From NCBI GenBank assembly GCA_012026655.1, contig JAAILG010000011.1, positions 124,001-188,000 of the forward strand: 64,000 bases of DNA. The letters are read 5' to 3'. The notes beneath the pieces were generated by a model that saw only the letters and a program-made list of their open reading frames with translations, searched no databases and was not told the DNA's origin. A program made the position numbers and the translations under genes. Below, one piece after another: positions 3,921-44,858 of the stretch; position 1 is the first letter of the stretch; each line of letters starts with the position of its first letter. The stretch comes from Hydrolagus affinis (lineage: Eukaryota).

Positions 3921-5169
3921 TAACTGTGTATATTGAGACAGCTCTACAGTATAGTGCAATCCATATAAATGAATGCCCTCACTGGAGGGTAGGACTCCTG
4001 CTTTGCCACATGAGAGAGTGTAACACAGTTTAGTTGCACTGTGGGTTATAACACGCAGCCCAAATTCAAAACAGCAACGAAATACAAGAAAATTACATTT
4101 ATAGAGCACCTTTCATGTCAGGAGGATGTCCCAAGGCGCTGAAAAGTTCGCTGACCAAATACAAAGTCACAACAGTTTACAGAAAATCCTGCAGAGCACT
4201 TTGAGAATATCGATGTGAAAGACGTTACATCAAATGCAGAATTTTGTTTTTAAAAAAATTACAGATTAAAAGTATTGATTATCAATATTCCTTATCTGTT
4301 TGTGGAATATGAAGCATGCTAATAACAGTATCATGGGATTTGGCTCGGAAGAGAATGCTAAGCCTGGGGTTTTGGGGGAGCTGGCTTCATGTCAGAAAAC
4401 ATTAATTCAAGAGTGGATTTGTTTTACTGTGCATGTTAACTTTAGCTGTCTTGCTGCCTGGCTTAGTATCTGCCCTCAAACCAATCCTTCTAAAAGTCTT
4501 GAAATAAACCAAGAGTTAGGTGTGATTAAAGAAATATTATGTCCAATTGTATCACTAGTCTCTTAAGTCGTGCCTTTTTTAAAGGGATGCCGATTGTTAT
4601 TACAGTACCTCCATTTGGAAACACAAATCCATGTTCGTGACTGGCGATTTCACAGCCAAACGCTGGAGCGATTCATTGCAGTGAAGTTAAAAAATATATT
4701 TATGCTAAATGGTTTCACAATTGTTCAAACTTTCAAAAAGATACTGCTTAATACGGAGAGATGATTTCATTTCCAGTCAGAGGAGATACCCACGATACAA
4801 GAGTTTCTCTGCACAATGAGTTGCTGTCTCGATTGAGTGAGTGTCACATGCAGAAAAAATGCATAGCTGATGGGAGGGAGGCAATGTTTGCATTACTGTA
4901 TCCCGGCTGCAGTGACAGGTAATCATTGCAAGAACCTCGATGATCAATCCTCTTAACTACTGCTCAGGTGAGTGCAGGAAAGAACATTCAGCTGACGGGA
5001 GAGTGAGTGACGATTAATAAACTCCCCTTTTTGGGGGGGGTCAACCAAATGTCTACACGTGCGGAAACCCATTATCATGCTTAAGAGTATCCTTATTAGC
5101 TGACCACATAACTCGGCATTGATATTGCCTTCCTGCTTTGTTCCACACATCCATGCCATGACCTCCTGT

Positions 5170-10333: not shown

Positions 10334-10797
10334 TTACTCCATCACCTTCTTGTTGCGTTTTCGGAGCCTATCTGTACCTTTCACAATATTTTGCTGCTTG
10401 CCACAAAAGAGATCCGCACTGGATGCTTCCTGGGCTTTATCGCTGCAGTCCCCGAGACTGAGATCAGTGTTCTCCATTTGATCCACATCCTCACTGACTT
10501 GGTTGAAGTCTTGATAGTCTCCACTTTGGGATTCTTCAACTAGACAATTGTTCTCATCACACTGAATCACATCTCTCTGCTCTCCGAGCCTCAGTGCATC
10601 TCCTTCCTTCTGCCCCATCGCTTGATCTTCCCTCTCTTTAGTTTGCTTTGTCACTGTTTCATTGGAAAAGCCTTCAGTAGTTTCTGCTTCCACTTGCTCT
10701 TCCAAATTCTCTGCAGAGCACTGGTCAGGCTCTGAGGAATTCTGCTGGCATCTGCATTTGGACATGCCATAAGTATGGTCCACTTCCTCAGGATATT
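10334..10797 (-). CDS. RIC3: RIC3 coding exon 6 (acidic C-terminal region)
   Basis: ttttctaag| (E)YPEEVDHTYG...LRKRNKKVME*; all six exons join in frame to 1101 nt / 366 aa; ends in the conserved LRKRN motif. Confidence 0.88.
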
Positions 10798-11499
10798 CTT
10801 AGAAAAAGGAAGGGAAACGTATAACTAGTTTGCGTTTTTTTTAGGAAAAAAATCTGCTCGACAGACTATTTGCATCAGATCAGCAAAACTACTTTTGAAC
10901 CCTTGACCATGCAATAGAGATGGATTTAGTACCGGAAGTGAACTGGGAAGTTGCGGGTCTATTGAGGGAAATATCTGGGCTGATATTCCAGTGTAGGTAC
11001 TGGGGAAGACTTCCTTATCTGCCTGTGCAGATAGACATAAAAGATGTCCATGACGTTATTTAAGGAGAGCAGGGAATTTCTTCGGTGTGTTGACTAGCAA
11101 TCCAGCTTAATTGGTCATTCATCTCAAGGCTGTTTGTGGGACATTGCTAGCCCAAAAAGATATTCAGATTTGCTGACAATAAACAATTGCTTCACTGACC
11201 GTAATTACAAACTGGGTCAGATAATGACATCTGGTGGTGAGGTATTGACATTACATCAACTAGTTGCAGGAAATTGGGCAAGTTGGAGATTGCTGTTCCC
11301 ATTGTATTTTGCTTGAAGTTGTTACTTAACATTGTTCCAACAGCACTCCAGGCAAAATTGCCAATGGCGTTTAGTATTATTTACTGTGCTAGTTATAATA
11401 CCGATGCATTTAAAATCAGCTTTCTTTTCTCTCCCCCCCACTCAAAAAAGTTAATAAAAATAACCTTTGTATACTATCAATACTTAAATTTATCTTTAC

Positions 11500-22095: not shown

Positions 22096-23150
22096 TTGCT
22101 TTCCCTTACAATGAACTCCCTGCCAGTGAATCCAATCTCATTGCCTCATTTTCAGCAATTCACAATTTGGAATAATTTACTGCAGCATACTGATGGCTTT
22201 GCAAAATGCATAATACATTGTAATATATTTTTCATTACAAAGAACCAACAAAGAAATTGCTACTTTAAGTGATTGGCGCATGATCGACCTTCCATTCCCC
22301 ACCACCCCCCACCCCACCATCCTTCATTTACCAGTTCAATTCAAAGCTGTTGGAGGAATGAAAGGTGACTGGTTGGGCCTGTTTGAGTTAAAACAGTTCT
22401 GTGAGGACCTGACCTAAGCCTCACTGTTGTACCTTATGAATCACTGTACAATAGGTACACTACCTTTTACACAACCATAGAAAATCTCAGTACAAGTATT
22501 AGATATGATAAGGCGTTATATCAAATGCAAGGATTATTATTATGATAGTGTGAATGTAATGAATCAAAATTTACAACGCAGAAGGCCATGTGTCCAACAT
22601 GTTTAGCTAGCTAGACTAGCTCTTCCGCTAGAGGTATTTACTCTAATCCCATTCCCCTGCTCTCTTCCCTGTTGGAAGAGATGCAGTCAAATACAATTTT
22701 GTGTTTTAAAAGTATTTTAAAGAAATTCCCCTTTTAGGCAAACATCATGTTTTTGCCCCCTTGATAACTTTTTTTTCTATCATCAATGAATGCACTTAAA
22801 ATACTAGTTATAAAAATATTTTGCTGTTCTCCACTCTCTTTTGGCTGTAAGGATAGACAGAAAATGTACTTACAGATGATGCCTATAAAGTAAAATATGC
22901 GCATTTATTAGTGTCATATTGATGTCTTAAATGCCTCCCAATAATTACTGTTAAGTGTAATGGTGGTAGATCGAGAGAAGCCCTTGAAGGTATTGCGATA
23001 TCAGAAACTTGCAGCTGGGCAAATCGAAAGGCTGAACTTACTTCCTGACGGTTTGTGTTTTGAACGTGGGTGATTGACTTGCTGCCTTTGAATGACATCA
23101 AAACCAAAATCCCAACTGAAACACATACAGTATTGTAATTTCCACAGTAC

Positions 23151-23353
23151 CTTAAAGAGGATATATAGGATGTACACAAATATTCCGAATCCGTAAATAG
23201 GGATGATCTGGCCCATAATGTTTTTATTGCCTCCTCCAACAGCTTTGGCTTTGACCACAGCTTCTGCATTGTTGAACTGGGAAGGGGCTGACCTGCTGGA
23301 TTTGATGTCAGAAGCTTTTGGACGCATCATGGGAGGAAATCGATTGGGGTTAG
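23151..23353 (-). CDS. RIC3: RIC3 coding exon 2 (RFPPMM motif and TM helix)
   Basis: ttttgcag| acceptor; NPNRFPPMMR...AEAVVKAK...MGQIIPIYGFGIFVYILYILFK; donor |gtactg; 203 nt, phase 1 to 0. Confidence 0.95.
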
Positions 23354-23724
23354 CTGCAAAACATAATAGACGAGAATCGTTTAAACATTTGCTACCCATG
23401 AATGGTACATTTTTAATCTTCATCAAAGTACAATTTGAGATTAAATCAATGTTTTTTTGCCAGCCTGCCTTCAGTTGCATTTTGATATCACCCTTTCTGT
23501 CTGCGTAATAAATTGCTTTGTGTTGAATTGGGAATATAGAGGTGTTGGTATTCTGGAAGGATGAGCCCAATTAGGTCCAATATAATGCCCCCAGCATCAA
23601 TTACCTGAGAGTGGCAAGTTATAGAGGAGGGATCAAAGTTCGGACTATCCTGATCTGTATCACGCAATATAATGCATTTATCCACTGAGTGATCAGGAGC
23701 AGCCAAACTGTTGCTCATTTGACA

Positions 23725-31325: not shown

Positions 31326-32342
31326 GTTGGGTCCTGAAAGGGAGTGAGCAATTCTAGCCCCTCAATCAAAACACTGGTCCTAAGTGTTTTTTGGCAGATC
31401 TCCAGGTTGCACTGGTATCCTCTCCATCCCCAATGGGCCACCCAGTTTTTGTTTTTAAAAAAAGAAATTAATAAATGTTTTCTAACAATCTAATAGGTGG
31501 TATTTCCTCATGTTTAGTGTGTACCAATAAAGCGAAAACATGTAGGTTGGCAGTAAAACATACCTCAATAGCACCAACCAACCCAATGCGATTTTTCAGC
31601 AAAATTCCCCATGACTTGGGAGGCAAATTTACATACTTTTCTATTGGCCCAGCCCGTTATTAACATAGCATTGCCAACTCCTTATCCCATGAATAGTTCG
31701 GGTTCAACCCAATGGGTTCATACAATCATGAAAATGCAAGTACTGGAAACGGGAATGAAGGGGAATAAATAAGGATAAAAATGAAAACAAAACAATATGA
31801 TACAAATAAACTTTATTGGGGAACGACTTGTGAATTTGATCAGGAAGAAATAAATGAGCGGTTTAAGAAGCAGGTATTTCAATGCGGCCAACTGAAGAGT
31901 AAACTAAATGCAAGGGTAAGAAGAAGAGTAATGAATGAAAGGAATGCTGAAAGGGAGACGAAAGCAAAAGGTACAAGAAATAAAGTGAAGGCTTTAGATT
32001 TCACCCACAAAATATACCGTCAATTCGCTTTGCAGTACATTCTGCGAAGCGCGTTGAGACGTCCCAAAGACATGATGATGTTAGATCAAATGCAAGGATC
32101 CTTATATCAATGCAAGTATTATTATATCCAATGCATGAATTACGATTATATCAAATGCAAGGATTATTATGATTAATATTTAGAATAGAAAATTAAATGT
32201 TTGGAGCAGGAAGATAACGCAAGGCAGGTTTATAAATGAATGTTTTTTTTCTTTGGAAGGGGTGGGTGGAGCGAGAGAGAAAGCAGAAGCCGCACCTCGC
32301 TTTATTTAAAGATTTGTATATAAATCCCTTCCCATTCCTTAC

Positions 32343-32457
32343 CCTCCTTCGGATCGCCCCCCTTCCCTCGGACCAGGAAGAGTTTAGGAAAGACGACGGA
32401 GCAACAGAGGACGACACAGGAGACCAGGGCCACCTTTTGGAAAGCGGAGAGAGTCAT
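32343..32457 (-). CDS. RIC3: RIC3 acetylcholine receptor chaperone, coding exon 1 (signal/TM segment)
   Basis: gaggccATG; MTLSAFQKVALVSCVVLCCSVVFPKLFLVRGKGGDPKE; donor G|gtaagg; 115 nt, phase 1. Confidence 0.9.
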
Positions 32458-32499
32458 GGCCTCAGTGGCTCGGGCAGCGGGAGCTCGGCCTCTCCTTTC

Positions 32500-33000
32500 T
32501 TCCACTAAAACCATCAACTCAAGCCCCCCCACCCCGGCCGGGGAGAGAGGGGAGAGGGGAGGTGGGAGTTTAACGAGGAAACGAGAGAAGAGCCTAAAGT
32601 CAAGGCCCGGATGGGAACGGCCTCCTTAGCAACCGGGAGAGGAGGCGGGGTGGGGGGGGGGGGGAGAACCAGACCGGAAATAAACCCCGCAATACGTTTG
32701 TAGCCCAATGTTCGAGCCCAAAGTAGCCCAATGTTATTATAATCATGATAATTATTATTTTTAGGGCAGCAGCCTTTTTTAAAAAAAACAACAACAAAGG
32801 GAACGGCGAGTGCTTTTTTAATATATAATATATGTAACAAATAGTGCGAGTAAAGGTTGTTTAAAAAAAATCGCGAGGCGCCCGCCCAAACCCGCCCAAT
32901 TGGGGGCGTGAACCCTGGACACGTGGTGATGGACCGGACCGGAAGCAGCTCCCCTCCCCCCCCCACCCCGCCCACCCCCCACCTCTCTCTCTCTCTCGGC
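32500..33000. promoter_or_regulatory. CpG-rich bidirectional promoter (RIC3 on minus, snoRNA host gene on plus)
   Basis: Local GC/CpG enrichment; GC boxes 32881-32887 and 32891-32897, CCAAT 32896-32900, E-box CACGTG 32920-32925, ETS CCGGAA 32674 and 32939, TCGCGA 32871, YY1-like CGCCAT at 33000. Confidence 0.75.
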
Positions 33001-36000
33001 GCCATTGGAAGCAGCAGCAGCTCCTCCAGGAGCTTTGCCTGAGGTAACTTTATATTGATGTTATATATCCAGTTAAACATTATATATATGTGTGTGTTGT
33101 GTCCTGTCTTTTATATATTGTATATATATAGTTAAGAGTTAAAGCTTTAGGTTATTTGATATGTGTTGTGTCATGTATTTTATACATTATATATATAGAT
33201 AGATAATATATATAGATATATAATAAAGATACAAAGCTTCAGGTTACTTTATATGTTATACAGTCAAGAGATCCCACCTGAGGTTATGTTTATATTTTTA
33301 ATGATTAATTATTTCACACGTGATGTAGTCCCTAAGACCAAACCGAAGGTTTATTCTATATATTATTGCAGGGAGAGCGAGAGAGAGAAATCAAGCCGGA
33401 GGTTACTTTATTTTACTGATATTATAGCTTTCCAGACTTGAGAGACCAAACCCTGCGTCATTTACATAATGTAATTTAGTCACAAGTTTACTTCTTATGG
33501 AGTCTCGGGGAAACCACACTTGGAAGTTAGTGACAGTCACCAAGCATGTAATAACGCAATCATTGCCTTTTTGTAGGGGTTGGGGTGGGGATTTTAAAAT
33601 AAATTGGTTAGAGTTTAACAATAAGAGTCTTAATCCTTGCATTCGATTCGAAGTTCCTTTTTGTCTCGAGCCTGAGCTGGTTCTTAGTTATTGGGAGTTA
33701 GTTATAAGACCCGGCTTGTGCTATTTAAATAGTTATAAAAGTTTGATTCTCTGACCCTTTTCCTCCACCGTCGGCGGTTGAGTGATGTTGGAAGTTTCTG
33801 GAAGATCTTGTTGCATGTAGATTTTTATATCTTTCATCAACAACAAAAAAAAAGCCACTATCACTGGTTACCCGCAGCTCATTTTAAACCTTTCACTTTG
33901 AGCCCTCGGGCTGATCTTTTTATAATAATGATTATTGTTATTTCCCCTCCCTCTCCCTCATTTGATCTTTCGGCCTAATAAGTTCTGAAACTCACTGACT
34001 TTCTCCCCCGTTCAGCACAGGCAGAACCACGTGGAGACAAGGCAGTCAGACAGACCTCATGGATCGAGCAGTTTCACAGAAGATGGCGCTGCTGGAATGG
34101 GTATGGACTAGAGAGAGACAAACAGACACGTGTTGGGGAAAATGAGAACTTAAAAACGAGAATAACTGGACAATTGAGCAGCTTTAGTTAATATATATAT
34201 TTTATTATAGATATATACACATGCATAATATATATTTTAAAAGGGTTACTGGGTTAACAATCGTGAAGCTGTTCTCGTGTATGTGTGTTTCTGTTGGTAG
34301 TTTTATCAGTATTACTTGAGCTGAAATGTACAATGCCTCCATGGACCACATCTAATGCTTTTTAATTTGCATTTTAAACCATAAAAATATACCTACTTAT
34401 GCAGAGGAAGGAGCTAACTCATTTTACCTTGATGGGGCAGCACAAGCTTATTTTAATACCAGTCTTGTGTCTTTACAAGTGTGTCAGCTAATGAGAACAT
34501 TGTTTGATAATGATCGATGGGCAGCTTCAATACAATTGCAGCGGCATACTTACAATGTACAACTGCAGTGCTCTTTAAAAGAAGTGTTTTAAACCAGGAA
34601 AGTTTCATTTTACAGAACAATAGCAATACCAAAGGCTAAACTCGTCATTCTTATTTCCTGCAGAATTGCTTTTTGGCCACCAAGGTCAAAGAACAATGGA
34701 GACTAGATAGAGGCTTGCTGAATGGTGTGAAGGTAAGTGTCTTTGAACCGAAAAGGGATAAAATTGAGAGAAGCAAGAATTTTTGCTGCCCACCCTCCAT
34801 TGCAAACACACACACACACACACCCCTTCAACATTCAGGTAGATTAGGAATCTTATTTTAAAATTATGGAATGTTGCTTTGCGGAACTGACTTCCGGATT
34901 TCAGCCATAAAATAGTTATTTCACTTTATAGTAAATCCCATGAAGCGCTTTGAGGCATCTCAACAGTGACCTAAGATGCTTTATCAAATGAAAGGATTAT
35001 TATGTAAAATGAAGTAGAGCTCTGGCCTATACTTGGGTGTTATCCGACATGAATAACCTGGAGTAGAAGGTAGCTTCACTGTGGCCATGTATATTTACCA
35101 ATGCCACTCACAAATGTTCAAGCAGCTGTTGCGTCCTGTATTTTATACATACATATTTATAAAATATATATAGTCAAGAGGCAAAGCTTCAGTAAGCCCG
35201 GTATTAATAAATTGTCTGGAGTTCGGTTAGCATTATGTGTCCCATCGTCAGGAGAGACTGCATTTCAAACAGGAATTTCCATGTGCAGGTGTCATGCATG
35301 AAACTGGTTTGAAAGTTCTCGTGCTTAGTTTGTTTCCACGTGTATCAGACACCTGGCTGATCACTACAAAATAGGTTGTTCTTAATGGTCAGGAATTCAA
35401 TTGGTTACTGTAGGAAAATTATCTTGCACAAACGTTTTTTTGAATTGCATTGCTGCAATAGTCTTAACTCTTATTTTGTGATGTCCTTGCATTTATTGAT
35501 TTTGGATCTTTGGGACATCACAAGTTGTGGTTAGTTACTCCCTATTCATCTATAGTTCCATGAGTTCTGTTCTGCGAGACATCCTTTGGAGTCCATGTTT
35601 CATTTATGAGTGATTTAATATTGATCAGGATTTGGCTATGGGATTCATTGAAAACCAAGCCTAATCTTTTTGTGGATTTCCATTTCAGATTACAATCAGA
35701 GATTGTTTTCTTTCCCGATTGCTAGCCTGGGATATTGGAATCAGGTGAAGTGCTCTTATTGTCACCCTGACAGATTGGCAACATTTGCCCCTTCCTTGTC
35801 TTTATTGCTCAATCAATCATTGGATAAGATTAGAGAGCTTGATCTTTTGATGTTTGGCTTCTTACTTTTGAAACATCAAACTGCAGTTTTCTTTTTGGTG
35901 GTGACTGAAGCCAAACTGCTGGAATCCAATGCCAAATAATTACATTGCCATGTCGTCGTTAAATGACCATGTGGTTAGCAATCAGCAAAACACTTAAAAA

Positions 36001-37044
36001 TGGTGTGTTTAGACACAATGGTTCATTGAACCTTTGGCTTCTTAGCCCAGTTTCTCGAGAGGGATGAGTTTCAGGTTCAGTATTATTGCAGCTCCTTCAA
36101 TGTTGTTTGAGGGAAGATTGTGTGTAGGTGACCTACTACATCGTACTACAACAACACGATTACATTTGTAGAACGCCTTTCACGTTGAGAGGACGTCCCA
36201 ACATAGTAGTTGCAATGTTCGAAGTTTTTTTTTCTGAAGTGCAATTGGACACATCTGGTAGCCAAGCCAAGAGGGACATGCTCCTGGTTCATTGTTTAGG
36301 TAGGTAATGGGGTTAATTGTTTGCTAGCAGGCATCCACTAATGGCATTTCTTGATTAGTTAACCTCGATAAGCCTGGAAACCACATAAGATATTAATCAA
36401 ACCCTTAGCGTGAAAACCTGTTCTGGCGTGCATGCAACATGACATAAGTTCATATTGAGTGCTTGACAGCTCTCAAGAATCATTGTTGATCCTTTATCCT
36501 TCAAACGCTCATTTCTCCAGTTTAGCTGAGTAAGGCAGTACAAGAAGTTTCATTGTATGCCTTTGGCTGATTATATTGTAGATTTCAGTAATTTTTTTGG
36601 TAGCATTGCGTATATCAAGGTCACTTCTAGTGCTGCTAAATGGAGTCTTTGGATGATTTTACACTAAATTTGTACCAACAATGGTAGTGTTCAGCTGTAA
36701 TAACCGATGAAATCTCTTTCTGGAGAAATTAAGCAGTTTTTTTCATTAGAATTAGTTTGATTCTAAATAGTTTGATTTCAGTTCGAAGGTAACCGAAATG
36801 GTAGGATAATCAGCTCACTATTTCACTTTTTTTTAAGAAAATGCTTTGAAAAAGCAGGTAAAACACTTGCTGTATCTATTGGATTGATGGAACTGCTGGA
36901 ATCCATTTAAAAATCTAGCAGTCTATTGGTTTATTCAGTTACAAAATAACTATGTTAGTTATACAAAAATAACATGTGTTATTCCTTTTTTCTAAAATAC
37001 ACTAGACAAATGCCAAGTTTATTGTAACAAAATATATGCCTGGT

Positions 37045-37136
37045 TAACTGGTGATAGAAAGTTTCTCCTTACATTTATCCCTCATTTAGGAACGATAGAA
37101 CAATTTAAAATCATAATGAAAACATTCTGATTATTT
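37045..37136 (+). ncRNA. Candidate box C/D snoRNA of unrecognised family (copy A) with 18S-complementary D guide
   Basis: C-like GTGATAG 37051; TAATGAAAACATT immediately before D box CTGA 37127-37130, complementary to 18S AAUGUUUUCAUUA; 81 nt upstream of the acceptor at 37211. Confidence 0.5.
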
Positions 37137-37458
37137 CATACAATATTAGATGATGTAATCCAATATCCTTAACCTAAAAAGATATTTAAATTTGGCTTTC
37201 CCCTTTTTTAGGCTGAGCTACAAAGCTGAACACTGAAATGTAGTGCCTCTGCTGTTGGTTGTCCTCATTTCTGCAGAAAGGCTTGGATGCCTATTTCTGG
37301 TATGTATGAGAAGCTTGATATATGTTAAGCGCTCTTGAGACGCCGCCCCACGTGAAGGGCGCGATATAAATGCAAGTTGTTGTACATTAAAAATGCACTA
37401 CTAGTGTACATTGTAAGTGTAACAAAATTACATTTATAGAGTGCTTTCATTGAGAATC

Positions 37459-37543
37459 TCCAGAGTTACAAATGATGTTCTCACGATGGTCTTCATAGTA
37501 AATGTGATGAAATTTCTGTATGATATTAGCTGATAGCTCTGGA
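37459..37543 (+). ncRNA. SNORD35: Box C/D snoRNA, SNORD35 (U35) family, copy 1
   Basis: Terminal stem TCCAGAGTTA/TAGCTCTGGA; box C ATGATGT 37472; guide TCTCACGATGGTCT complementary to 28S AGACCGUCGUGAGA; D' CATA 37494; C' GTGATGA 37504; D CTGA 37530; 81 nt upstream of the acceptor at 37614. Confidence 0.9.
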
Positions 37544-38214
37544 TTATTTTGTTGATTCAAAGTAGAAATGCGGGGAATGTGTTACAAGGTAACTCATCAG
37601 ATTGTTTTTCACAGCTGAAAATGAAGGTGTTCCAAGGCAATATTTCTGGATCCATGGATCTTTAGCAATGCTAAGCAGTCTGTTCAGGTATGCATGAGGA
37701 CTAATTATTCTTGTGGGTTCCCTGAATGTTAAACTATCTCGGTGACTTGGTTTCAATACATGTTAGCTTTACTGACACTAGCATCAGTGAAGGGACTTGT
37801 GTACCTTGCTTTCCTAGAGAAATTAAAAATCTCAAGCCTTCGCTTCCAGAAAGTGAAAGTGTGGCTCCTCTCAGCTAAATCAGTAACGCATTTGTAAAGA
37901 TTTACTGCTTTATTATAAATGAACTAAAAAGAGTGACAGTTGGAAATAAAATTTGCAACTAGTCTTATTAATTGTGATTCTAGAACACGCGTTTTTTAGT
38001 TTAACACTTGTATTTATAACTTTACTTTTTTTTATCCTGTTTAACGTACACTTTTTCAAATGGTTAGTTCATTTGCAGCAAGATATATGGTTCGTTGTTT
38101 AAAGAATCAAATGTATTTTGTAGAATAGTTGCATGGCAGATTTGCTTCATTTTTACACGTGGGAATGGTTATTGTAACTGCGTTGATGAAGCTGCCCAAT
38201 GGCAACATCTGGTT

Positions 38215-38313
38215 AAATAACTGGTAATAGAAAGTTTCCTCTTACATTTATCCCTCGTTTAAAGCACCTGGTTAGAATAATTTAAAATTCTAATGAAAAC
38301 ATTCTGATTATTT
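38215..38313 (+). pseudogene. Paralogous copy B of the candidate C/D snoRNA (box C mutated)
   Basis: GTAATAG at 38224; guide and CTGA intact at 38291-38307; AAATAA/TTATTT flanks. Confidence 0.4.
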
Positions 38314-38389
38314 CATACCACTTTAGACTTTAATAATGCTGTACTTGTGCTTTTAAGTGCACATTAAATTGTTGTATTCATTGAGATTC

Positions 38390-38474
38390 TCCAGAGTTAC
38401 AAATGATGTTCTCACGATGGTCTTCATAATAAATTTGATGAAATTTCTACATGAAATTAGCTGATGGCTCTGGA
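38390..38474 (+). ncRNA. SNORD35: SNORD35 family copy 2
   Basis: Same stem, boxes and intact guide TCTCACGATGGTCT; C' is TTGATGA; D CTGA 38461. Confidence 0.88.
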
Positions 38475-38637
38475 TTATTTTGTTGCTTCCAAGTAGAAAT
38501 GGAGGAGACTTGTTACAAGGAAACTGATCAAATTGTCTGGTTTCTAGCTAGTTTTTTCACAAATGAAGATAAGTGCTCCCTGGCAATTTTGAATTCATGG
38601 ATCTTCAGCGATGCAGTCTGTTCAGGTGGGCGTGAAG

Positions 38638-39178
38638 TAGTGTCCGTCGATATTGAATTTTTCTGGTATCAATATATCGGTGGGCTCATATTGATATCAC
38701 CAGGTTTTTTTTACTCGTGTTCCAAACCTTTACATATGAATGGCTTGGGAGGGTTGTGTGCAAATCTGATTGTGTTTGGTAGTGGGGGGAAGGGAAGAAG
38801 GGGAATGTGTGTGCATTCAGGGATGCGCGCGCATTCAGATATGTGCTCTACGCCCAGGAGGTTTGCAATGCCGGCGACAAGGTCTGTTGAACTTTCTTGT
38901 TACTGTTTTTGTTGTTTGTTGTTGTTGATGGAGCCCTTTGGCGCTTTAAGAAAATTAAGCTCTTGTATGCGTTGTGTCGTCAAGTACATTTGAACCTTTG
39001 GTTGTATATTTGCTGTATGCTGTAACGTGGCATATGTTGATGATATACTGATATTTCGTGGATATACCGATTTTTTTTCATACCGAACTTTTTTGATATA
39101 CGATATATTCACATTACCAATATTGGGATATCAATATGAAAAATTATACCAATATAATCGATATATCGCCGGACACTA
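38638..39178. mobile_element. Non-autonomous hAT-superfamily DNA transposon (541 bp)
   Basis: TIRs TAGTGTCCGTCGATAT / ATATCGCCGGACACTA (15/16); perfect 8-bp TSD GCGTGAAG (38630-38637, 39179-39186); subterminal GATAT/ATATC repeats; absent from paralogous units. Confidence 0.9.
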
Positions 39179-39281
39179 GCGTGAAGGCTACTTGTGGATT
39201 CCCTGGGTGTTAAATTATCTGGGTGACCTGGTATCGTTATATGTAAGCTTTCCTGAGCCCTAGTATCAGTAAAGGGATATA

Positions 39282-39622
39282 CAGTAAAAGCCTGTTTATC
39301 CAACACCCTCTGGGGGGGGTCGACTAATTGATTGTCGGATAATCGGGCGGCAAGTTGCCGAAAACCTAACACAAAAAAATTACTTATTTTAAAACATACC
39401 ATATTAATAATATACTAAATAGTAACAATATGGTATGGATACTTACCAATAAAGATTCAAGCACACTTGGTAAAACACAATTCTTTTACCGTTCTGCTAA
39501 AAAACCATAGTTCGTAAGTTTAATAAGTGCGCAGAGTGAGCATACTCGCGATTGCTGAAATGGGAAATTGCTCCGGGTATGCAATCCGGTTGATCGGGTC
39601 ACGGATAAACAGACCTTTACTG
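39282..39622. mobile_element. Tc1/mariner (Tigger/pogo-like) MITE (341 bp)
   Basis: TIRs CAGTAAAAGCCTGTTTATCC / GGATAAACAGACCTTTACTG (18/20); TA on both sides. Confidence 0.85.
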
Positions 39623-40041
39623 TATGTACTTTGCTTACCTATCAGTAGTTCCCTCCTACATTTACCCCTCATTTAAACACTTTGTTTGATTGAAATAAAT
39701 TGGATTGAAATATTTTGTTTATTTAATTCTACATTGGATGGTGTGATGCAATATCCTAAACTAAAAATGTATTTACATTTGACTTTTGTCATTTCCTTTT
39801 TTTTAGGCTGAGCTACAAAGCAGATACTGAAATGCAGTGTCCCATTGCAGATTGTCTCCATTTCTTCAGAAAGGCTTGGATACTTGTTCTCCAGGTATGT
39901 AAGAGAAACTATGTGTTAAGTGTTCCAAGACACTGCCCTGTGTGAAGTACACAATATAAAAAGCAAGTTGCTTTCGATTTTAATGATGTTAAATAAAGGT
40001 GCTTATAAGTGCACATTAGATCACTGCATTCATTGAGATTC

Positions 40042-40126
40042 TCCAGAGTTACAAATGATGTTCTCACGATGGTCTTCATAGTAAATGTGATGAAATTTCT
40101 ATATGACATTAGCTGATGGCTCTGGA
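40042..40126 (+). ncRNA. SNORD35: SNORD35 family copy 3
   Basis: Intact stem, C, D', C' and D boxes and guide. Confidence 0.88.
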
Positions 40127-40674
40127 CTGACTTTTATTGATTCAGAATAGAAATGAAGGAGACTTATTGTAAGGTAACTCATCAAATTGTTTTTGTTTTC
40201 AGACAGTTTTTCTAAGCTGAAGAGGATATTTCTGAATCCATGGGTCTTCGGGAATGCTAAGCAGTTTGCTCCGGTAAGCATGGGGGCTACTTAATCTTGT
40301 GGTTTTGCCGAGTATTAAATCGTCTGCGTGATCTGGTTTCAGTGCATGTAGAGTTTACTGACCCAGGCGTCAATAAAGGGACTTGCTTTCCTACCAGTGA
40401 GAAATGCAAGCTCTCTCTCTCTCGCCTGCGCTTTCACAAAGTGAGATAAGTGGGTTGACACTTGCATAATAACTCTTAATACCCTTTTTGATTCTTTTTA
40501 AAGCACGCTTTTTCAAATGCCTAGTCAGTTTGCGACAAGATAAATGGTTAGGTTCATTGATTAGAGAATCAAATGTATTTTCATAGATGAGTTGCATGGC
40601 AGTTTTATTTCATTATTATTTGTGGAAATGGTTTTTATAACTGCTTTGAAGCTGCCCAATGGTAACTTCTGGTT

Positions 40675-40773
40675 AAATAACTGGTGATAGAAAGTTTCCT
40701 CTTACATTTACTCGTTGCTTAAAACACCTGGTTAGATTAATTTTAAATTCTGATGGGAGCATTCCTATTATTT
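40675..40773 (+). pseudogene. Paralogous copy C of the candidate C/D snoRNA (box D lost)
   Basis: GTGATAG 40684; guide TGATGGGAGCATT followed by CCTA instead of CTGA. Confidence 0.35.
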
Positions 40774-40849
40774 CATACCACATTAGACTTAAATAATGCT
40801 GTACTCATGCTTTTAAGTGCACATTAGATTGCTGCATTCATTGAGATTC

Positions 40850-40934
40850 TCCAGAGTTACAAATGATGTTCTCATGATGGTCTTCATAATAAATGTGATG
40901 AAATTTCTATATGAAATTAGCTGATGGCTCTGGA
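40850..40934 (+). ncRNA. SNORD35: SNORD35 family copy 4
   Basis: Intact boxes and stem; guide TCTCATGATGGTCT (C>T, becomes a G-U pair). Confidence 0.85.
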
Positions 40935-41996
40935 TTGTTTTGTTGCTTCAAAGTAGAAATGGAAGAGACTTGTTGCAAGGTAACTGATCAAATTGTTTTT
41001 ATTTCTGCTAGTTTTTTTTACAGCTGAAGATAAGTGATCCATAGCAATTCTGAATCTGCAAAATGCTAAGTCTTCAGGAATGCTAAGCAACTTGTTCAGG
41101 TGGGCGTGAAGGCTTAATCTTGTGGTTGTCCTGAGTATTGACCTGTCTGGATGACCTGGTTTCATTGCATGCAAATTTTACTGACCGTTATATTGATGAT
41201 GATCAGGAGTGGGTATACATACTTGTTTACCTATCAGTAGGGAAAATACAAGCTATCACACATCTGTGCTTCCACAAACTGAAAGAGTGGCTCCCTCTCT
41301 GTCAGCTACGGCAGTGACATATTTGTAAAGATACATTGTTTTATTGTAGATTAACTAAAACGAAGGACTTTTGGAAATAAAAATCGGTAATTAATCTTCT
41401 GTTATTTATCATTTCAAATTGTAGTACCCAATTCAGTAGTTTAATATTAGTTTCTTCTGCAAAATATACAGTCGTTTCACCTTATAGTGTCTACTATGAA
41501 GCTGTTTGAGACATCTCGAAAATGTGTGATAAGGCGCGATATCAATGCAACAAGTAGTATTACACAATGGCCCTATAATATATTTTTGTTCATTTTATAA
41601 AGTACAATTTTCAAGTGCTTAGTTCATATGTAGATCGTGGTTGGAAGCCACACAAGCAAAACATCTGGGTTTGATTCCCACCAGGGCAAAAGGTTGGGCG
41701 AGTTTCCTTTCTCCACACTCCTCTGTTGACCTGGCAGTAAGTGGAAACCTGGTTGTTAGTTGATTGGTAGATTGTGTTTCTGGGGATAATAGTTCCTTAA
41801 CAGAAAATCGGTCACTTCAAACCACAGCTTTCAATGAAATAGCTAATGCAATTGGTTGTTATTTTTCACCTACAAAATATACTGTCAATTCATTTTACAG
41901 TTTATTCTGTATAGTTCTTTGAGGCACGTCGAAAACAAAATAAGCTGTTATATAAGATGCAGGGATCATTATTATTTGTGACAAAATATGAGACAA

Positions 41997-42079
41997 TCCA
42001 GAGTTACAAATGATGTTCACATGATGGTCTTCATAATACATGTGATGAAATTGTTATTACGTTGACTGATGGCTCTGGA
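41997..42079 (+). ncRNA. SNORD35: SNORD35 family copy 5 (most diverged)
   Basis: Intact boxes and stem; guide TCACATGATGGTCT with one mismatch and one extra wobble; 3' half diverged. Confidence 0.8.
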
Positions 42080-43059
42080 TTATTTTATTGATTCAAAGTA
42101 GGAATGAAGGAGTCTTGTTGCAAGCTAACTGATCAAATTATTTTTCACAGCTGAAGATGAAAGTGCTCCATGGTAATATTTCTGAATCCACGGGTCTTCA
42201 GGAATGCTAAACAGGTGGGCATGAGGGCTACTTATTCTTGTAGTTTCCTCGAATGTAAAACTGTCTGGGTGACCTGGTTTCAGTACATGTAAACTTTGCT
42301 GACTCTCAGATCCCTAGTGCTTAAATGACTTGCTTCTTCTAGTTTATTTGTAATTTATTTGGTCTTCAAAACTGTAGCCTTTGGGGGGAATACTACTATT
42401 CTCCCAGAGCTGCTGGCTCTGTTTAATTCTGGCCAAAATAATTTTGCACTTTATAATTTCTCATTAGTTAGGAAAAATAATGCAATTTGTCCCTGAACTT
42501 GGCTATCATCTACAAACATACTTTCCAGTAATTGGGAATAGTGGCTGTTTTTTTTTTCCTCTTTTCCCTTCTGCCTCATTCTGTCTCAGTCCATTTGAGT
42601 TTAGACCAATAATAGCAAAAAGTTCAGTTTGGCGTTTATTTAAAACATTTGGTGCGTCGTATGTTGCCAGTTCTCGATTTAACATTCCAACTAAGAATGA
42701 TAAATGAGTCAATTTCCCCTCATCTGTAACCTTTCTTCTCTTCTAGACAACAACTTTGAAGAGGGATTCAATACAGGGACAAAATGAATTCACAGCCGTC
42801 GTCTTTCAGTACTTCACCTTACTGGGTCATCCAATCATTAAAATGCCTGGGATGCATTTTGATGCATTTGGGTTTGTGAACTCTTGCTGGTTTTTGTACA
42901 GCTAGTTCGCTAGTGCTGTAGTTTCACAGCTGAGTCCAGTTGACTGCCTTATGTGTGATAGCGAAGAATAGTCTTTGTGATTGACTTCAGTTTGTGCACA
43001 AAATCATTTCTGGCTCCTATTGAACTAAATGAGGCCATAATTAAAATAAATTTCACTGA

Positions 43060-43340
43060 GCAGTGCATATTGGGGGGTTTCTTGGTTTGTCTCTGAGCTG
43101 GTTTGGCTGGAGCCAGTAAGAGAGCTATGATTGTCCTTGGTGCCTTTGGGCTTCAGAGAGGAAATTAATCAGAATTTCTACTCTTGATTGCTTTTCAGTG
43201 GGTGCTGCTGGAAACTGCATTTCTGGACATTGAGCAAGGCCAATTGGTCTTAATTGTCATTCTCCTGGGGCCAAATAGCCTGTTGACACTGCCTGAAACA
43301 TGAGGAATGGGTTACGAAAGAGTGTTGTTACTTGTGGAAT
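43060..43340 (+). repeat. Old interspersed repeat (SINE-like), with a related reverse copy at ~30080-30290
   Basis: tcagtgggtgctgctggaaa...aatagcctgttgacac resembles the reverse complement of 30170-30270 (gttgataggcttttcc...tttctagctggggtca). Confidence 0.4.
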
Positions 43341-44202
43341 TGTGTCCCTAGGTGAACTTGGACTTGTGCATGTTTCGAAGGGAAGTAGAGGATATTTTCA
43401 TTGTACCATCTTTATATAAGCAAGATTCTGAAGGGGGGTTGTTGAACCCTTATTTTACCTCAAACACTTTGATTACTTTTAGACTTAGTGTTAAGTTCTG
43501 AGTAGAAAATTCTAATGGACACAAATCACTTTTTGAGTATTTCATATGGTTTACATTGTGAGTTTCTGGCAATTATTCAAGCAGCTATTGACTGGTTTCT
43601 TAAACTGCCTCTAATTGTGGCCCCATTTGTATTACTGAAAACACAAGAAAACTTAAGTCACTATGACATTTACAAATTACTGCAATAACCAAATGTCGTA
43701 TTTTCTCTTGGGGACAGCAAAGATTACTTAAGTAACAAGAAAATTGCTGTTTAAATCTTGAATGGCTGTTGGTAGGTACAACATGAAAGCCAATCTAGCT
43801 GAAACGTTCATCTATTGTGTCCCAGCGGGTTTAGTCCAGATTATTGCATGTTAATATCATTAACCATGTAATGTATGTTAGCACTGCAAGTGCCAAAGAG
43901 CACAATTATATTGCGGTCTCGCTTGAACGGTTGGATATAATAGTACAGATTATAAACACTTTAGAAATACCCATGTTTTACTTGTATATGTTAATCTAAC
44001 TTAAAATTGTATTTCTAGCTGGGTGAGAACTGGGTTTGGAGGTTGAATTGTTGTTTATTAAACATGATTTTCTTAAACTCACTGGGTGCTGAATTGTGTA
44101 ATTTTAGGGATATATGGTGGACGTGAGATGCATTGCACTATCTCTGGTTGAAAGCTATTTTAGTTTTTAACAAGCTTTTTTAAACACATGCTACTTACTA
44201 TA

Positions 44203-44858
44203 TAGTCCACCTTTGCCGAACGCGACTTTCTCGACTGCGGATTTGCCTATACGCAAAGAAATAAATTAGGCAGTTTTTTGCGTAACGCGAGTAAAATTTG
44301 TGTATATACGCGCTGGCTGGCCCCGTGCGCATGTGCATTTGGGAGGACGCCGGCCCCGCGCGCAGTGCATACTTGGGAGGACGCTGGCAGCTCCCGACTA
44401 AGTCCGATGATTCCTCAGCTGGCTGGACTTGCGCATATGCGCATTTGGGAGGACGCCAGCCTCCACGTGTAATGTACACTTGGGAGGACGCCGCCAGTTC
44501 CTGCCTAAGTCCGATGATTCATCGGTGCAACCTGCTAAACAGAAGAGAGAGAGTCTCTTAAAACTTCCAGGGTAAAATCATTTAGCCAAGCTGTGGTAGT
44601 GTAAGGTGCTGTTTTATTGTCTAGCGAGTTGGGGAGCGTGATGAACGGGCCAGCCAGCTGTAAGTTGCCTCAGTACGTACCTTGCATTGGTCGGATGTGG
44701 ATGTGCCTGGAGGCTTGAGGTTGGATAGCCTGTAGATGGATTCCTCTCACCCCTTTTTTTCCATTACAATACAATACTTATTAAGCTTACCGAACATGAT
44801 TTTACTGAGTGCGTTGTTCTACAGGAACGTAACTGCTGCGTTCGGCAAGGGTCTACTG
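44203..44858. mobile_element. Tigger/pogo-like non-autonomous element with internal GC-rich repeats
   Basis: Imperfect TIRs TAGTCCACCTTTGCCGAACGC / GCGTTCGGCAAGGGTCTACTG; TA flanks; four TTGGGAGGACGC units at 44339-44490. Confidence 0.75.

What the first reader, a model, noticed from the sequence alone, without database searches (positions are those of the whole stretch)
32982..43070. Putative non-coding 5'TOP snoRNA host gene transcribed head-to-head with RIC3
Seen: a (CT)n start followed by CGCCAT and a donor at 33043, a chain of ~13 short GT-AG exons with no long ORF, intronic C/D snoRNAs at the canonical distance from acceptors, and a terminal AATAAA. Known: this is the GAS5/SNHG1(UHG) architecture, and in mammals SNORD35A/B reside in RPL13A and RPS11 introns. 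I know of no snoRNA host gene between RIC3 and LMO1. Inference: a lineage-specific host lncRNA that captured SNORD35 and shares a promoter with a nicotinic-receptor chaperone gene.
Basis: partly seen in the sequence, partly recalled or inferred. Interest (0 to 1): 0.85.

Follow-up and report, generated by a model that had tools for sequence, protein, structure and literature searches.

The report
Non-coding host gene carrying five SNORD35 snoRNAs
Next to the RIC3 gene lies a spliced, apparently non-coding gene whose introns carry five copies of a small RNA that guides one chemical mark on ribosomal RNA, which is a familiar gene design seen here with an unusual cargo and location.

Summary
Five SNORD35-type box C/D snoRNAs lie on the + strand between 37459 and 42079 (Rfam 22-30 bits, below the gathering score of 36). 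Each has C, C' and D boxes and a 10-bp terminal stem. Their 14-nt guide pairs with the conserved eukaryotic LSU rRNA motif and places the methyl group on a C.

Each copy sits 71-89 nt upstream of a 3' splice site. I count 12 short GT-AG exons (1131 nt, longest ORF 67 codons). They start at a CpG-rich (CT)n tract at 32982-32997 and end at ATTAAA/AATAAA (43040-43050).

Stranded poly(A)+ reads laid on 37140-43139 fall almost only in bins that hold predicted exons, and all in one direction. The table did not show the splice joints.

RIC3 is confirmed on the minus strand (Pfam PF15361, ATG at 32457), about 530 bp from the putative start.

Not tested:
- the transcription start and the 5'TOP claim
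- exons e1-e4
- the "lineage-specific capture" idea
- the LMO1 neighbour, which was not seen in the window

Verdict: a new member of the GAS5/UHG kind of snoRNA host gene, amplified by tandem duplication. Interest is modest. Two first-reader notes on this same window (s1-906374, s1-906375) cover parts of it.

The parts
32860..32984 (.). CpG-rich promoter-like segment between RIC3 and the host gene: GC boxes at 32882, 32892 and 32968; CCAAT/ATTGG at 32896/32899; E-box at 32920; ETS core CCGGAAG at 32939
   Evidence: For 32800-32999, GC is 0.56 and CpG o/e 0.91. This is the only CpG-rich segment upstream of the array up to 44.2 kb.
32985..33043 (+). Putative exon 1. Its 5' end is not mapped. It is assumed to lie within the CT run 32982-32997. 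Donor GAG|gtaact.
   Evidence: no read evidence
34016..34100 (+). Putative exon e2
   Evidence: AG/GT, pyrimidine tract; no read evidence
34664..34732 (+). Putative exon e3
   Evidence: no read evidence
35689..35744 (+). Putative exon e4
   Evidence: no read evidence
37212..37299 (+). Exon a1
   Evidence: depth 5/0/4 (X2/X3/X4) at 37256, all with the first mate on -.
37459..37543 (+). SNORD35-type snoRNA copy 1
37615..37687 (+). Exon b1
   Evidence: bin 37540-37739 at 2.1/1.05/2.11 on -, 0 on +.
38390..38474 (+). SNORD35-type snoRNA copy 2
38548..38625 (+). Exon b2. The ancestral acceptor is lost (CACAAATG instead of CACAG|CTG), so an upstream TTTCTAG| is assumed.
   Evidence: depth 6/8/5 at 38595 on -.
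39807..39894 (+). Exon a2
   Evidence: 2/2/7 reads at 39884 on -.
40042..40126 (+). SNORD35-type snoRNA copy 3
40203..40273 (+). Exon b3
   Evidence: depth 4/8/12 at 40232 on -.
40850..40934 (+). SNORD35-type snoRNA copy 4. It has one guide change, C to U opposite an rRNA G, which leaves a wobble pair.
41024..41099 (+). Exon b4
   Evidence: bin 40940-41139 at 2.71/5.57/3.82 on -, 0 on +.
41997..42079 (+). SNORD35-type snoRNA copy 5. It has two guide changes (one wobble, one mismatch) and the lowest Rfam score, 22.1 bits.
42151..42214 (+). Exon b5
   Evidence: bin 42140-42339 at 2.15/5.66/3.22 on -, 0 on +.
42747..43070 (+). Last exon, with ATTAAA at 43040 and AATAAA at 43045 and a GT-rich stretch after about 43070. 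The exact 3' end is not mapped.
   Evidence: bins 42740-43139 at 4.6-10.9 on -, 0 on +.
32305..32457 (-). Neighbour: first coding exon of RIC3 (ATG at 32457, open for 51 codons). The exon end is not determined.
   Evidence: RIC3 identity comes from the Pfam hit on ORF 23004-23570(-), E=1.5e-16.

Best explanation
This is a Pol II-transcribed, spliced, polyadenylated, non-protein-coding snoRNA host gene of the UHG/GAS5 kind. It runs about 10 kb on the + strand. It most likely starts in the CpG-rich (CT)n tract about 530 bp from the RIC3 start codon and ends at 43.07 kb.

Its 3' half is a tandemly duplicated exon-intron unit. Five introns each hold one SNORD35-type box C/D snoRNA, placed about 50 nt upstream of a conserved branch-like TAACT(G/C)ATC element and 71-89 nt from the acceptor.

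Inferred from the known pathway: splicing releases the introns, the snoRNP core (SNU13, NOP56, NOP58, fibrillarin) assembles on the kink-turn, and exonucleases trim back to the 10-bp terminal stem. The roughly 85-nt RNA then pairs its 14-nt 5' guide with the LSU rRNA motif AGACCGUCGUGAGA. It directs 2'-O-methylation of the first C of that motif, the site known as 28S-Cm4506 in human.

The spliced RNA has only short ORFs that stop far upstream of later junctions. It is therefore probably a by-product degraded by NMD.

Shown here: the snoRNA anatomy, the guide-target match, the splice signals, the lack of a long ORF, exon-restricted stranded poly(A)+ reads over the 3' half, and the RIC3 neighbour.
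Inferred: the start site and TOP character, the linkage of e1-e4, snoRNA processing, methylation and NMD.
For: snoRNA identity:
- 5 of 5 copies are called SNORD35 by Rfam on the + strand, E 0.002-0.38 in a 12-kb search.
- The C box+guide string gives 5 matches against 0 expected.
- The guide CUCACGAUGGUCUUCA is identical to the Rfam consensus in 3 copies.
- The terminal stem is 10-12 bp in all 5. Folding z-scores run from -1.7 to -3.6.

Target:
- The reverse complement with one G.U is the conserved LSU_rRNA_eukarya consensus UUUAGACCGUCGUGAGACAGG (locus L010).
- Eukaryotic LSU matches cover the motif in 3 of the 8 metagenome loci scanned (L002, L006, L010). A bacterial LSU match covers it in L003 and an archaeal one in L022. 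L014 and L018 gave no hit, and the LSU match in L024 lies away from the motif.
- With D' taken as CAUA, the fifth nucleotide upstream pairs with a C.

Selective conservation among the 5 units:
- snoRNA 0.90, C box+guide 0.96
- spacer 0.70, exon 0.61, flanks 0.56-0.59

Gene model:
- 11 of 11 introns are GT..AG.
- ORFs reach at most 67 codons.
- 0 Pfam hits for 8 stop-free exon frames.

Expression:
- In three stranded poly(A)+ runs, the bins that hold predicted exons have depth 1-11, with the first mate on - and at most 0.23 on + (X3 has almost none, 0.03, in the a1 bin).
- The TE-free intron bins 40340-40939 and 42340-42739 read 0.
- At 4 of 5 exon positions where a DNA run differs, the RNA reads carry the window's letter.

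Promoter: this is the only CpG-rich segment between 33.05 and 44.2 kb upstream of the array, and it has GC, CCAAT, ETS and E-box motifs.

Background (passages read): UHG, GAS5, U17HG, U19HG and U50HG are non-coding and 5'TOP, and UHG and GAS5 RNAs are degraded by NMD (PMC7277114). AQR binds about 50 nt upstream of the branch site, and methylation falls 5 nt upstream of D/D' (PMC10557570).
Against: - All five Rfam scores are below the gathering score of 36, and the gathering-level scan found nothing.
- The joints table was filled with transposon and contig rows (123 rows not shown), so no splice junction read was actually seen.
- No start or end pile-up was reported (table 6: none).
- Some reads lie in bins I call intronic:
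  - 38140-38539 up to 2.5
  - 41140-41339 up to 1.7
  - 41940-42139 at 2.05 in X4
- Exons e1-e4 and the start site have no read evidence at all.
- The D' box (CAUA) is degenerate.
- The read direction is interpreted through the tool's statement that in most stranded libraries the first mate is antisense. I had no control gene.
- The RNA runs carry a different organism code (B) from the DNA holder (A).
- A 63-codon ORF runs in one frame through e2-e3-e4, and I could not exclude that it is translated.
Confidence: 0.72

Rival explanations
1. The snoRNA array is real and hosted in a spliced non-coding transcript, but that transcript does not start at the (CT)n tract. Exons e1-e4 would be chance GT-AG segments or belong to another RNA, and the true start would lie elsewhere, for example between 35.7 and 37.2 kb. 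The gene would then not share a promoter with RIC3 and need not be 5'TOP.
For: No read was laid on 32.9-37.1 kb (one search covered 37140-43139 only). The start site is purely a sequence guess. e1-e4 are not part of the repeated unit.
Against: There is no other CpG-rich segment between 33.05 and 44.2 kb. The four 5' exons have good acceptors and donors. The motif set at 32.88-33.0 kb is typical of housekeeping promoters.
Confidence: 0.15
2. The transcript encodes a small protein (the 63- or 67-codon ORF), or is the 5' part of a coding gene whose remaining exons lie beyond 43.1 kb. The snoRNAs would then sit in an ordinary protein-coding host.
For: A 63-codon ORF from ATG 34059 stays open through e2, e3 and e4 in one phase. 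A second ATG at 34083 in that frame has A at -3 and G at +4. The reads were not followed past 43139.
Against: - The ORF stops in a1, with 7 exon junctions downstream.
- The repeated exons are only 61% alike and carry frame-breaking indels.
- 0 Pfam hits for 8 exon frames (a weak test, since the peptides are 23-29 aa).
- ATTAAA/AATAAA plus a GT-rich element sits at 43.04-43.09 kb, and depth is highest in the last two bins.
- No ORF of 70 aa or more with a Pfam hit among the three tested downstream or upstream.
Confidence: 0.06
3. The copies are decaying snoRNA pseudogenes carried along in a duplicated segment. The host RNA is transcribed, but no functional SNORD35 snoRNP is made from it, and the working gene lies elsewhere, for example in rps11 or rpl13a.
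For: The Rfam scores are below threshold. Copies 4 and 5 have guide substitutions. D' is degenerate. Poly(A)+ data cannot show the mature RNA.
Against: - The snoRNA is 90% conserved against 56-61% for flanks and exons.
- Boxes C, C' and D and the stem are intact in 5 of 5 copies.
- The C-to-U change shared by copies 4 and 5 keeps pairing as a wobble with the rRNA G.
- The position relative to the branch-like element is kept in all 5 copies: CTRAY in 3, and the same element as TAACTCATC in units 1 and 3.
Confidence: 0.07

Closest known systems
Mammalian non-coding 5'TOP multi-snoRNA host genes (UHG/SNHG1, GAS5, U17HG, U19HG, U50HG) and the chicken gas5-like host gene
   Same: Short exons under 100 nt. 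One box C/D snoRNA per intron at a fixed distance from the acceptor. No long ORF. Exons much less conserved than the snoRNAs. Poly(A)+ spliced RNA. A pyrimidine tract at the presumed start. (Passages in PMC7277114, PMC2653536 and PMC6954239.)
   Different: Those genes carry several different snoRNA families, whereas this one carries five paralogous copies of one family. Its place next to RIC3 has no counterpart that I could find: 0 papers hold both 'RIC3' and 'snoRNA host gene'. TOP initiation is not shown here.
SNORD35A/B (U35; Rfam RF00211, clan CL00056) in RPL13A and RPS11 introns of amniotes; snR73 in yeast, AtU35 in plants
   Same: The same 5' antisense element (16 of 16 nt identical to the Rfam consensus in three copies), the same predicted LSU C target, and the same box order C-guide-D'-C'-D (PMC8393311, PMC2653536 and PMC3511168 passages).
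   Different: The host is a non-coding gene rather than a ribosomal protein gene. There are five tandem copies rather than one per host. The RNA is shorter than the family model, lacking about 4 nt after box C and about 9-13 nt in the middle, which puts it below the Rfam gathering score.
Tandem snoRNA arrays in repeated non-coding exon-intron units (SNORD116/SNORD115 in the Prader-Willi locus, SNORD113/114)
   Same: A duplicated unit made of a short non-coding exon plus an intron with one C/D snoRNA, which evolves by local duplication (the abstract of PMC4063771 was seen in a search listing; the rest is recalled).
   Different: Those are eutherian, imprinted and mostly orphan guides in dozens of copies. 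This one is a canonical rRNA guide in five copies with housekeeping-type promoter motifs. The likeness is one of design only, not of kinship.

Membership tests
SNORD35 (RF00211) | [quoted passage not shown] | tested here: met
   AUGAUGU and CUGA are present, with a 10-12-bp stem, in 5 of 5 copies.
SNORD35 (RF00211) | Family-specific 5' antisense element upstream of D' | tested here: met
   CUCACGAUGGUCUUCA is identical to the Rfam consensus in 3 copies, with 1 change in copy 4 and 2 in copy 5.
SNORD35 (RF00211) | Guide complementary to LSU rRNA, with a C at the fifth position upstream of D' (human 28S-Cm4506) | tested here: met
   A 14-bp duplex (13 Watson-Crick pairs plus 1 G.U) forms with the Rfam LSU_rRNA_eukarya consensus at model positions of about 2965-2978. 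The C is predicted if D' is CAUA. Equivalence to human position 4506 rests on the shared family guide and on PMC8393311 and PMC3511168, not on an alignment to human rRNA. This species' own 28S was not available.
SNORD35 (RF00211) | Score at or above Rfam's gathering threshold (36 bits) | tested here: not met
   Scores are 29.9, 29.1, 29.1, 25.8 and 22.1 bits, with 0 hits at gathering level. The shortfall comes from deletions in unpaired, poorly conserved model regions, so I call the copies SNORD35-type by guide and target rather than by the curated cut-off.
SNORD35 (RF00211) | A stable RNA of about 85 nt and dependence of the methylation on it | not testable with these tools
   The only runs offered were poly(A)+. 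Bin 39940-40139, which holds copy 3, has about 0 depth, as expected for a non-adenylated small RNA.
Non-coding 5'TOP snoRNA host genes (UHG/GAS5 class) | snoRNAs in introns of a spliced, polyadenylated Pol II transcript | tested here: inconclusive
   Exon-bin-restricted, one-direction depth in 3 poly(A)+ runs over 8 predicted exons, and 0 in clean intron bins. No junction row was displayed, and e1-e4 were not covered.
Non-coding 5'TOP snoRNA host genes (UHG/GAS5 class) | No protein-coding potential | tested here: met
   The longest ORF is 67 codons in 1131 nt. Four exons have stops in all three frames. No Pfam hit. The joined model itself was not searched, by rule.
Non-coding 5'TOP snoRNA host genes (UHG/GAS5 class) | Exons poorly conserved relative to the snoRNAs | tested here: met
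   Among the five paralogous units, exon identity is 0.61 and snoRNA identity 0.90. Conservation between species was not testable.
Non-coding 5'TOP snoRNA host genes (UHG/GAS5 class) | Transcription starts at a C within an oligopyrimidine tract | not tested
   A 16-nt CT run lies at 32982-32997, but no 5'-end data exist.
Non-coding 5'TOP snoRNA host genes (UHG/GAS5 class) | Spliced RNA unstable, NMD-sensitive | not testable with these tools
   This is inferred only from the early stop: the stop at 37236 is followed by 7 junctions.

The most novel reading that the evidence does not exclude
In this lineage the ancient rRNA guide SNORD35 has left its ribosomal-protein-gene hosts altogether. It is produced only from a dedicated non-coding gene that arose beside RIC3. 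That gene was amplified by unit duplication into a SNORD116-like array and is driven from a promoter shared with a nicotinic-receptor chaperone gene. This would be a complete host switch of a housekeeping guide to a young lncRNA, with dosage set by tandem copy number.
Probability: 0.2. Interest if true: 0.5.

Novelty: new member of a known kind. Interest (0 to 1): 0.35.

Why it matters
The locus adds a clear non-mammalian example of a non-coding snoRNA host gene, one where introns rather than exons carry the product. It shows the gene in the act of growing by tandem duplication of an exon-intron-snoRNA unit.

It also shows that a guide found from plants to yeast to human (U35/snR73) can sit in quite different hosts. 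That bears on how freely snoRNAs move between host genes, and on whether TOP-type co-regulation with ribosome synthesis is the constraint that survives such moves.

For genome annotation, it shows that Rfam's SNORD35 cut-off misses all five copies.

It does not open a new mechanism. Every step proposed here is known from other host genes.

Tried and rejected
- Rfam at gathering level on the whole window gave nothing. Only the permissive run showed the copies. Its other rows are single hits with E of 0.15 or more and I treat them as chance: snoR32_R81 on the minus strand in intron 1 (E 1.8), SCARNA7 over a GT repeat, and SNORD38 on the minus strand.
- My own C/D scan of 32.9-43.2 kb on both strands found the five copies plus two weak 5-bp-stem candidates, at 37150-37236 (which overlaps exon a1) and 41196-41282. 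I do not count these.
- The second candidate C/D RNA at 37045-37136 (note s1-906375) got no Rfam row. Its box-like motifs are not kept in its paralogous copies: GTGATAG becomes GTAATAG in copy 2, CTGA becomes CCTA in copy 4, and copy 3 is degenerate. I leave it out of the gene's cargo.
- Tandem Repeats Finder does not see the units, because the period exceeds 500. The repeat finder does.
- The run search gave no run on record as RNA that holds the stretch. The three RNA runs came as additions.
- The joints, loose-ends and start/end tables were swamped by transposon-derived rows, so junctions and the poly(A) site could not be read.
- A LIM-motif regex in 43-64 kb found nothing.
- Literature: 'RIC3' + 'snoRNA host gene' gave 0 papers. 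'snoRNA' + 'host gene' + 'shark' + 'tandem' gave 3, none relevant. 'snoRNA' + 'elephant shark' + 'host gene' gave 5, none on this topic by title and abstract. PMC13736004 and PMC6984369 do not mention SNORD35 in the main text.
- Supplements were closed. Xenopus supplementary table 1 and chicken Additional file 5 may list SNORD35 hosts that I could not see.
- The search of earlier findings found no note on rpl13a or rps11.
- I did not search the joined exon model in any tool. Exons were searched one by one.

Full report
WHAT IS THERE

The stretch 32982-43070 was read in full. A 16-nt CT run (32982-32997) is followed by GGCGCCATTGG and a donor after 33043.

Downstream I could place 12 short exons on the + strand. 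All 11 introns begin with GT, end with AG and have pyrimidine-rich acceptors:
- e1 32985-33043
- e2 34016-34100
- e3 34664-34732
- e4 35689-35744
- a1 37212-37299
- b1 37615-37687
- b2 38548-38625
- a2 39807-39894
- b3 40203-40273
- b4 41024-41099
- b5 42151-42214
- last exon 42747 to about 43070

The last exon ends with ATTAAA at 43040, overlapping AATAAA at 43045 (read off), and a GT-rich stretch. I did not test it.

THE snoRNAs

Rfam at its curated thresholds finds nothing in the window. With permissive filters on 32500-44500 it reports five matches to SNORD35 (RF00211). All are on the + strand, at 29.9, 29.1, 29.1, 25.8 and 22.1 bits against a gathering score of 36, with E of 0.002 to 0.38.

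The 24-nt string made of box C and the guide occurs five times at up to 3 mismatches, where 100 shuffles gave none. The 16-nt guide CUCACGAUGGUCUUCA is letter for letter the Rfam consensus in three copies. Copy 4 has one change and copy 5 has two.

Every copy has the following:
- box C (AUGAUGU)
- a C' box (UGAUGA)
- box D (CUGA)
- a terminal stem of 10 pairs in four copies and 12 in the fifth, UCCAGAGUUA with UGGCUCUGGA
- a minimum-energy fold closed by that stem (z from -1.7 to -3.6)

The scores fall short because the copies lack about 4 nt after box C and about 9-13 nt of the unpaired middle of the model (alignments).

THE TARGET

I searched public metagenome contigs for the reverse complement of the guide with one G.U allowed. 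Of the loci returned I ran 8 through Rfam:
- In three (L002, L006, L010) a eukaryotic LSU rRNA match covers the motif.
- In L003 a bacterial LSU match covers it, and in L022 an archaeal one.
- L014 and L018 gave no hit.
- In L024 the eukaryotic LSU match lies away from the motif.

In L010 the Rfam LSU_rRNA_eukarya consensus reads UUUAGACCGUCGUGAGACAGG in capitals, which marks it as highly conserved. The guide UCUCACGAUGGUCU pairs with AGACCGUCGUGAGA over 14 positions, 13 Watson-Crick and one G.U.

Methylation falls on the nucleotide paired five positions upstream of D or D' (passage in PMC10557570). If D' is the CAUA that follows the guide (the Rfam consensus has CaGA there), the target is the first C of the motif. 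That fits the family's known product: 28S-Cm4506 for human SNORD35A/B (passage in PMC8393311), 28S-C3991 for the chicken homologue (PMC2653536), and Cm in plants and yeast (PMC3511168).

The C-to-U change shared by copies 4 and 5 lies opposite an rRNA G, so it keeps a wobble pair. The second change in copy 5 creates a mismatch near the far end of the duplex.

THE REPEATED UNIT

The repeat finder shows that the 3' half is built from duplicated units. I aligned the five stretches from about 60 nt upstream of the snoRNA to about 30 nt past the next donor. Mean pairwise identities:

| Segment | Identity |
|---|---|
| snoRNA | 0.90 |
| box C + guide | 0.96 |
| spacer to the acceptor | 0.70 |
| exon | 0.61 |
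| flanks | 0.56-0.59 |

The snoRNA, not the exon, is what selection or gene conversion keeps. This is the hallmark of non-coding host genes.

The snoRNA 3' ends lie 71, 73, 76, 89 and 71 nt from the acceptor. A conserved TAACT(G/C)ATC, a branch-site-like element, lies 49-53 nt after the snoRNA in the three units where it matches CTRAY. The same element reads TAACTCATC at the aligned position in units 1 and 3. This matches the position-dependent assembly reported for mammalian intronic C/D snoRNAs, where AQR binds about 50 nt upstream of the branch site (PMC10557570).

CODING POTENTIAL

A script walked the exon coordinates in order and counted codons.
- The longest ORFs are 67 codons (ATG at 42170) and 63 codons (ATG at 34059, stop at 37236 in exon a1).
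- The 63-codon frame runs open through e2, e3 and e4. I note this as a point for the small-protein rival. It ends with seven junctions still downstream, the classic NMD configuration of UHG and GAS5 (PMC7277114).
- Exons a1, b4, b5 and the last exon have stops in all frames.
- Eight stop-free exon frames of 23-29 aa gave no Pfam hit. This is a weak test.

EXPRESSION

The run search found one holder of unknown kind (X1, contigs at about 60x depth, 1-2% different; probably DNA). It added three stranded poly(A)+ single-cell RNA runs from one sample. I laid all four on 37140-43139. I chose the 3' half because poly(A)-primed libraries favour it.

In the RNA runs:
- Each bin that holds a predicted exon has mean depth of about 1-11 (X3 has almost none, 0.03, in the a1 bin), with the first mate on the minus strand and at most 0.23 on the plus strand.
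- The transposon-free intron bins 40340-40939 and 42340-42739 read 0, and 37740-38139 reads at most 0.09.
- Position-wise depths inside exons are 5/0/4 (37256), 6/8/5 (38595), 2/2/7 (39884) and 4/8/12 (40232).
- At four of these five checked exon positions (37256, 37284, 38595, 40232) the RNA carries the window's letter. At 39884 it carries the letter of X1. The reads therefore come from this locus in the same or a very close species.

The tool states that in most stranded libraries the first mate is antisense, so the RNA is on the + strand, in line with GT-AG on +.

Against this reading:
- The joints table showed only transposon and contig rows (123 rows hidden), so I saw no junction read.
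- No start or end pile-up was listed.
- A few reads lie in bins I call intronic (38140-38539, 41140-41339, 41940-42139).
- Three segments (about 37340-37430, 38640-39640 and 41540-41940) have heavy two-strand depth and loose ends typical of dispersed repeats.

THE 5' END AND THE NEIGHBOUR

RIC3 is confirmed.
- The minus-strand ORF at 23004-23570 matches Pfam RIC3 (PF15361, E 1.5e-16).
- A first coding exon opens at the ATG at 32457.
- That is about 530 bp from the CT run.
- The segments 32251-32750 and 32801-33050 are the only CpG-rich ones until 44.2 kb.
- The part next to the CT run holds three GC boxes, CCAAT/ATTGG, an ETS core and an E-box.

That is a plausible bidirectional housekeeping promoter, and snoRNA host genes do start in pyrimidine tracts (PMC6954239, PMC7277114). 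No 5'-end data were available, though. The start site, the TOP character and the membership of e1-e4 remain inference.

LMO1 was not seen in the window.

COMPARISON AND NOVELTY

The design is that of UHG/GAS5-type genes and of the chicken gas5-like gene. That gene was described as a hotspot of snoRNA expansion by cis-duplication (PMC2653536).

Differences in host gene between vertebrate lineages, and higher copy numbers outside placental mammals, are already documented (passages in PMC6984369 and PMC2653536).

What is particular here:
- The cargo is five copies of one ancient rRNA guide, which in human sits in RPL13A and RPS11 and in chicken in RPS11.
- The location is beside RIC3.
- The repeated exon-intron unit recalls the SNORD116 design.

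I found no paper linking RIC3 with a snoRNA host gene (0 papers) and none on shark snoRNA host genes. I could not test whether the gene is lineage-specific or whether ribosomal protein genes of this genome still carry SNORD35.

Two first-reader notes on this same window cover the five copies (s1-906374) and the second candidate RNA (s1-906375). A note on another piece of this genome (s1-906363) claims another unusual snoRNA host. I did not check it.

VERDICT

The host-gene reading is well supported for the 3' half and plausible for the 5' half. It is a new member of a known kind, of modest interest (0.35).

Noticed in passing
window 37045-37136, 38218-38309, 39632-39720, 40678-40770: A second repeated element was proposed elsewhere as a novel C/D snoRNA. 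Only the first copy has both a C-like box (GTGATAG) and CTGA. Copy 2 reads GTAATAG, copy 4 reads CCTA at the D position, and copy 3 is degenerate. It has no Rfam row. In units 2 and 4 it shares an intron with a SNORD35 copy because exon 'a' is missing there.
   Followed up: partly
window about 37340-37430, 38640-39640, 41540-41940: These intronic segments have very high read depth on both strands in the RNA runs and thousands-fold word depth in the DNA contigs, with many loose ends. They are dispersed repeats or transposon fragments inserted in the host-gene introns.
   Followed up: no
window 36240-36299: A possible extra 60-nt exon (tttttttttctgaag| ... TTTAG|gtaggt) between e4 and a1. No reads were laid there.
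   Followed up: no
window 44201-44650: The most CpG-rich segment of the window (up to 20 CpG per 200 nt), with a 34-nt unit repeated 2.1 times at 44319-44388, lies 1.1 kb past the host gene's end. It may be a repeat element or another promoter.
   Followed up: no
window 41140-41400 and 38140-38540: Low but non-zero minus-first-mate read depth (up to 2.5) in stretches I call intronic. This may be retained introns or unpredicted alternative exons.
   Followed up: no
window 23004-23570 (-) and 32457 (-): The ORF that holds RIC3's second coding exon (with the Pfam RIC3 core) lies about 9 kb from the first coding exon, so RIC3 has a long first intron here. An acidic 154-aa minus-strand ORF at 10337-10798 may be its C-terminal exon, though it has no Pfam hit.
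   Followed up: partly
window 38552-38560 versus 41013-41030: In unit 2 the ancestral acceptor CACAG|CTG has mutated to CACAAATG, yet the exon region still has reads. An upstream TTTCTAG| probably took over as the acceptor.
   Followed up: partly
L010 600-718: The environmental contig used as the rRNA reference has a 5S rRNA gene about 150 nt downstream of its LSU 3' end. This linked arrangement is seen in some fungi and protists.
   Followed up: no
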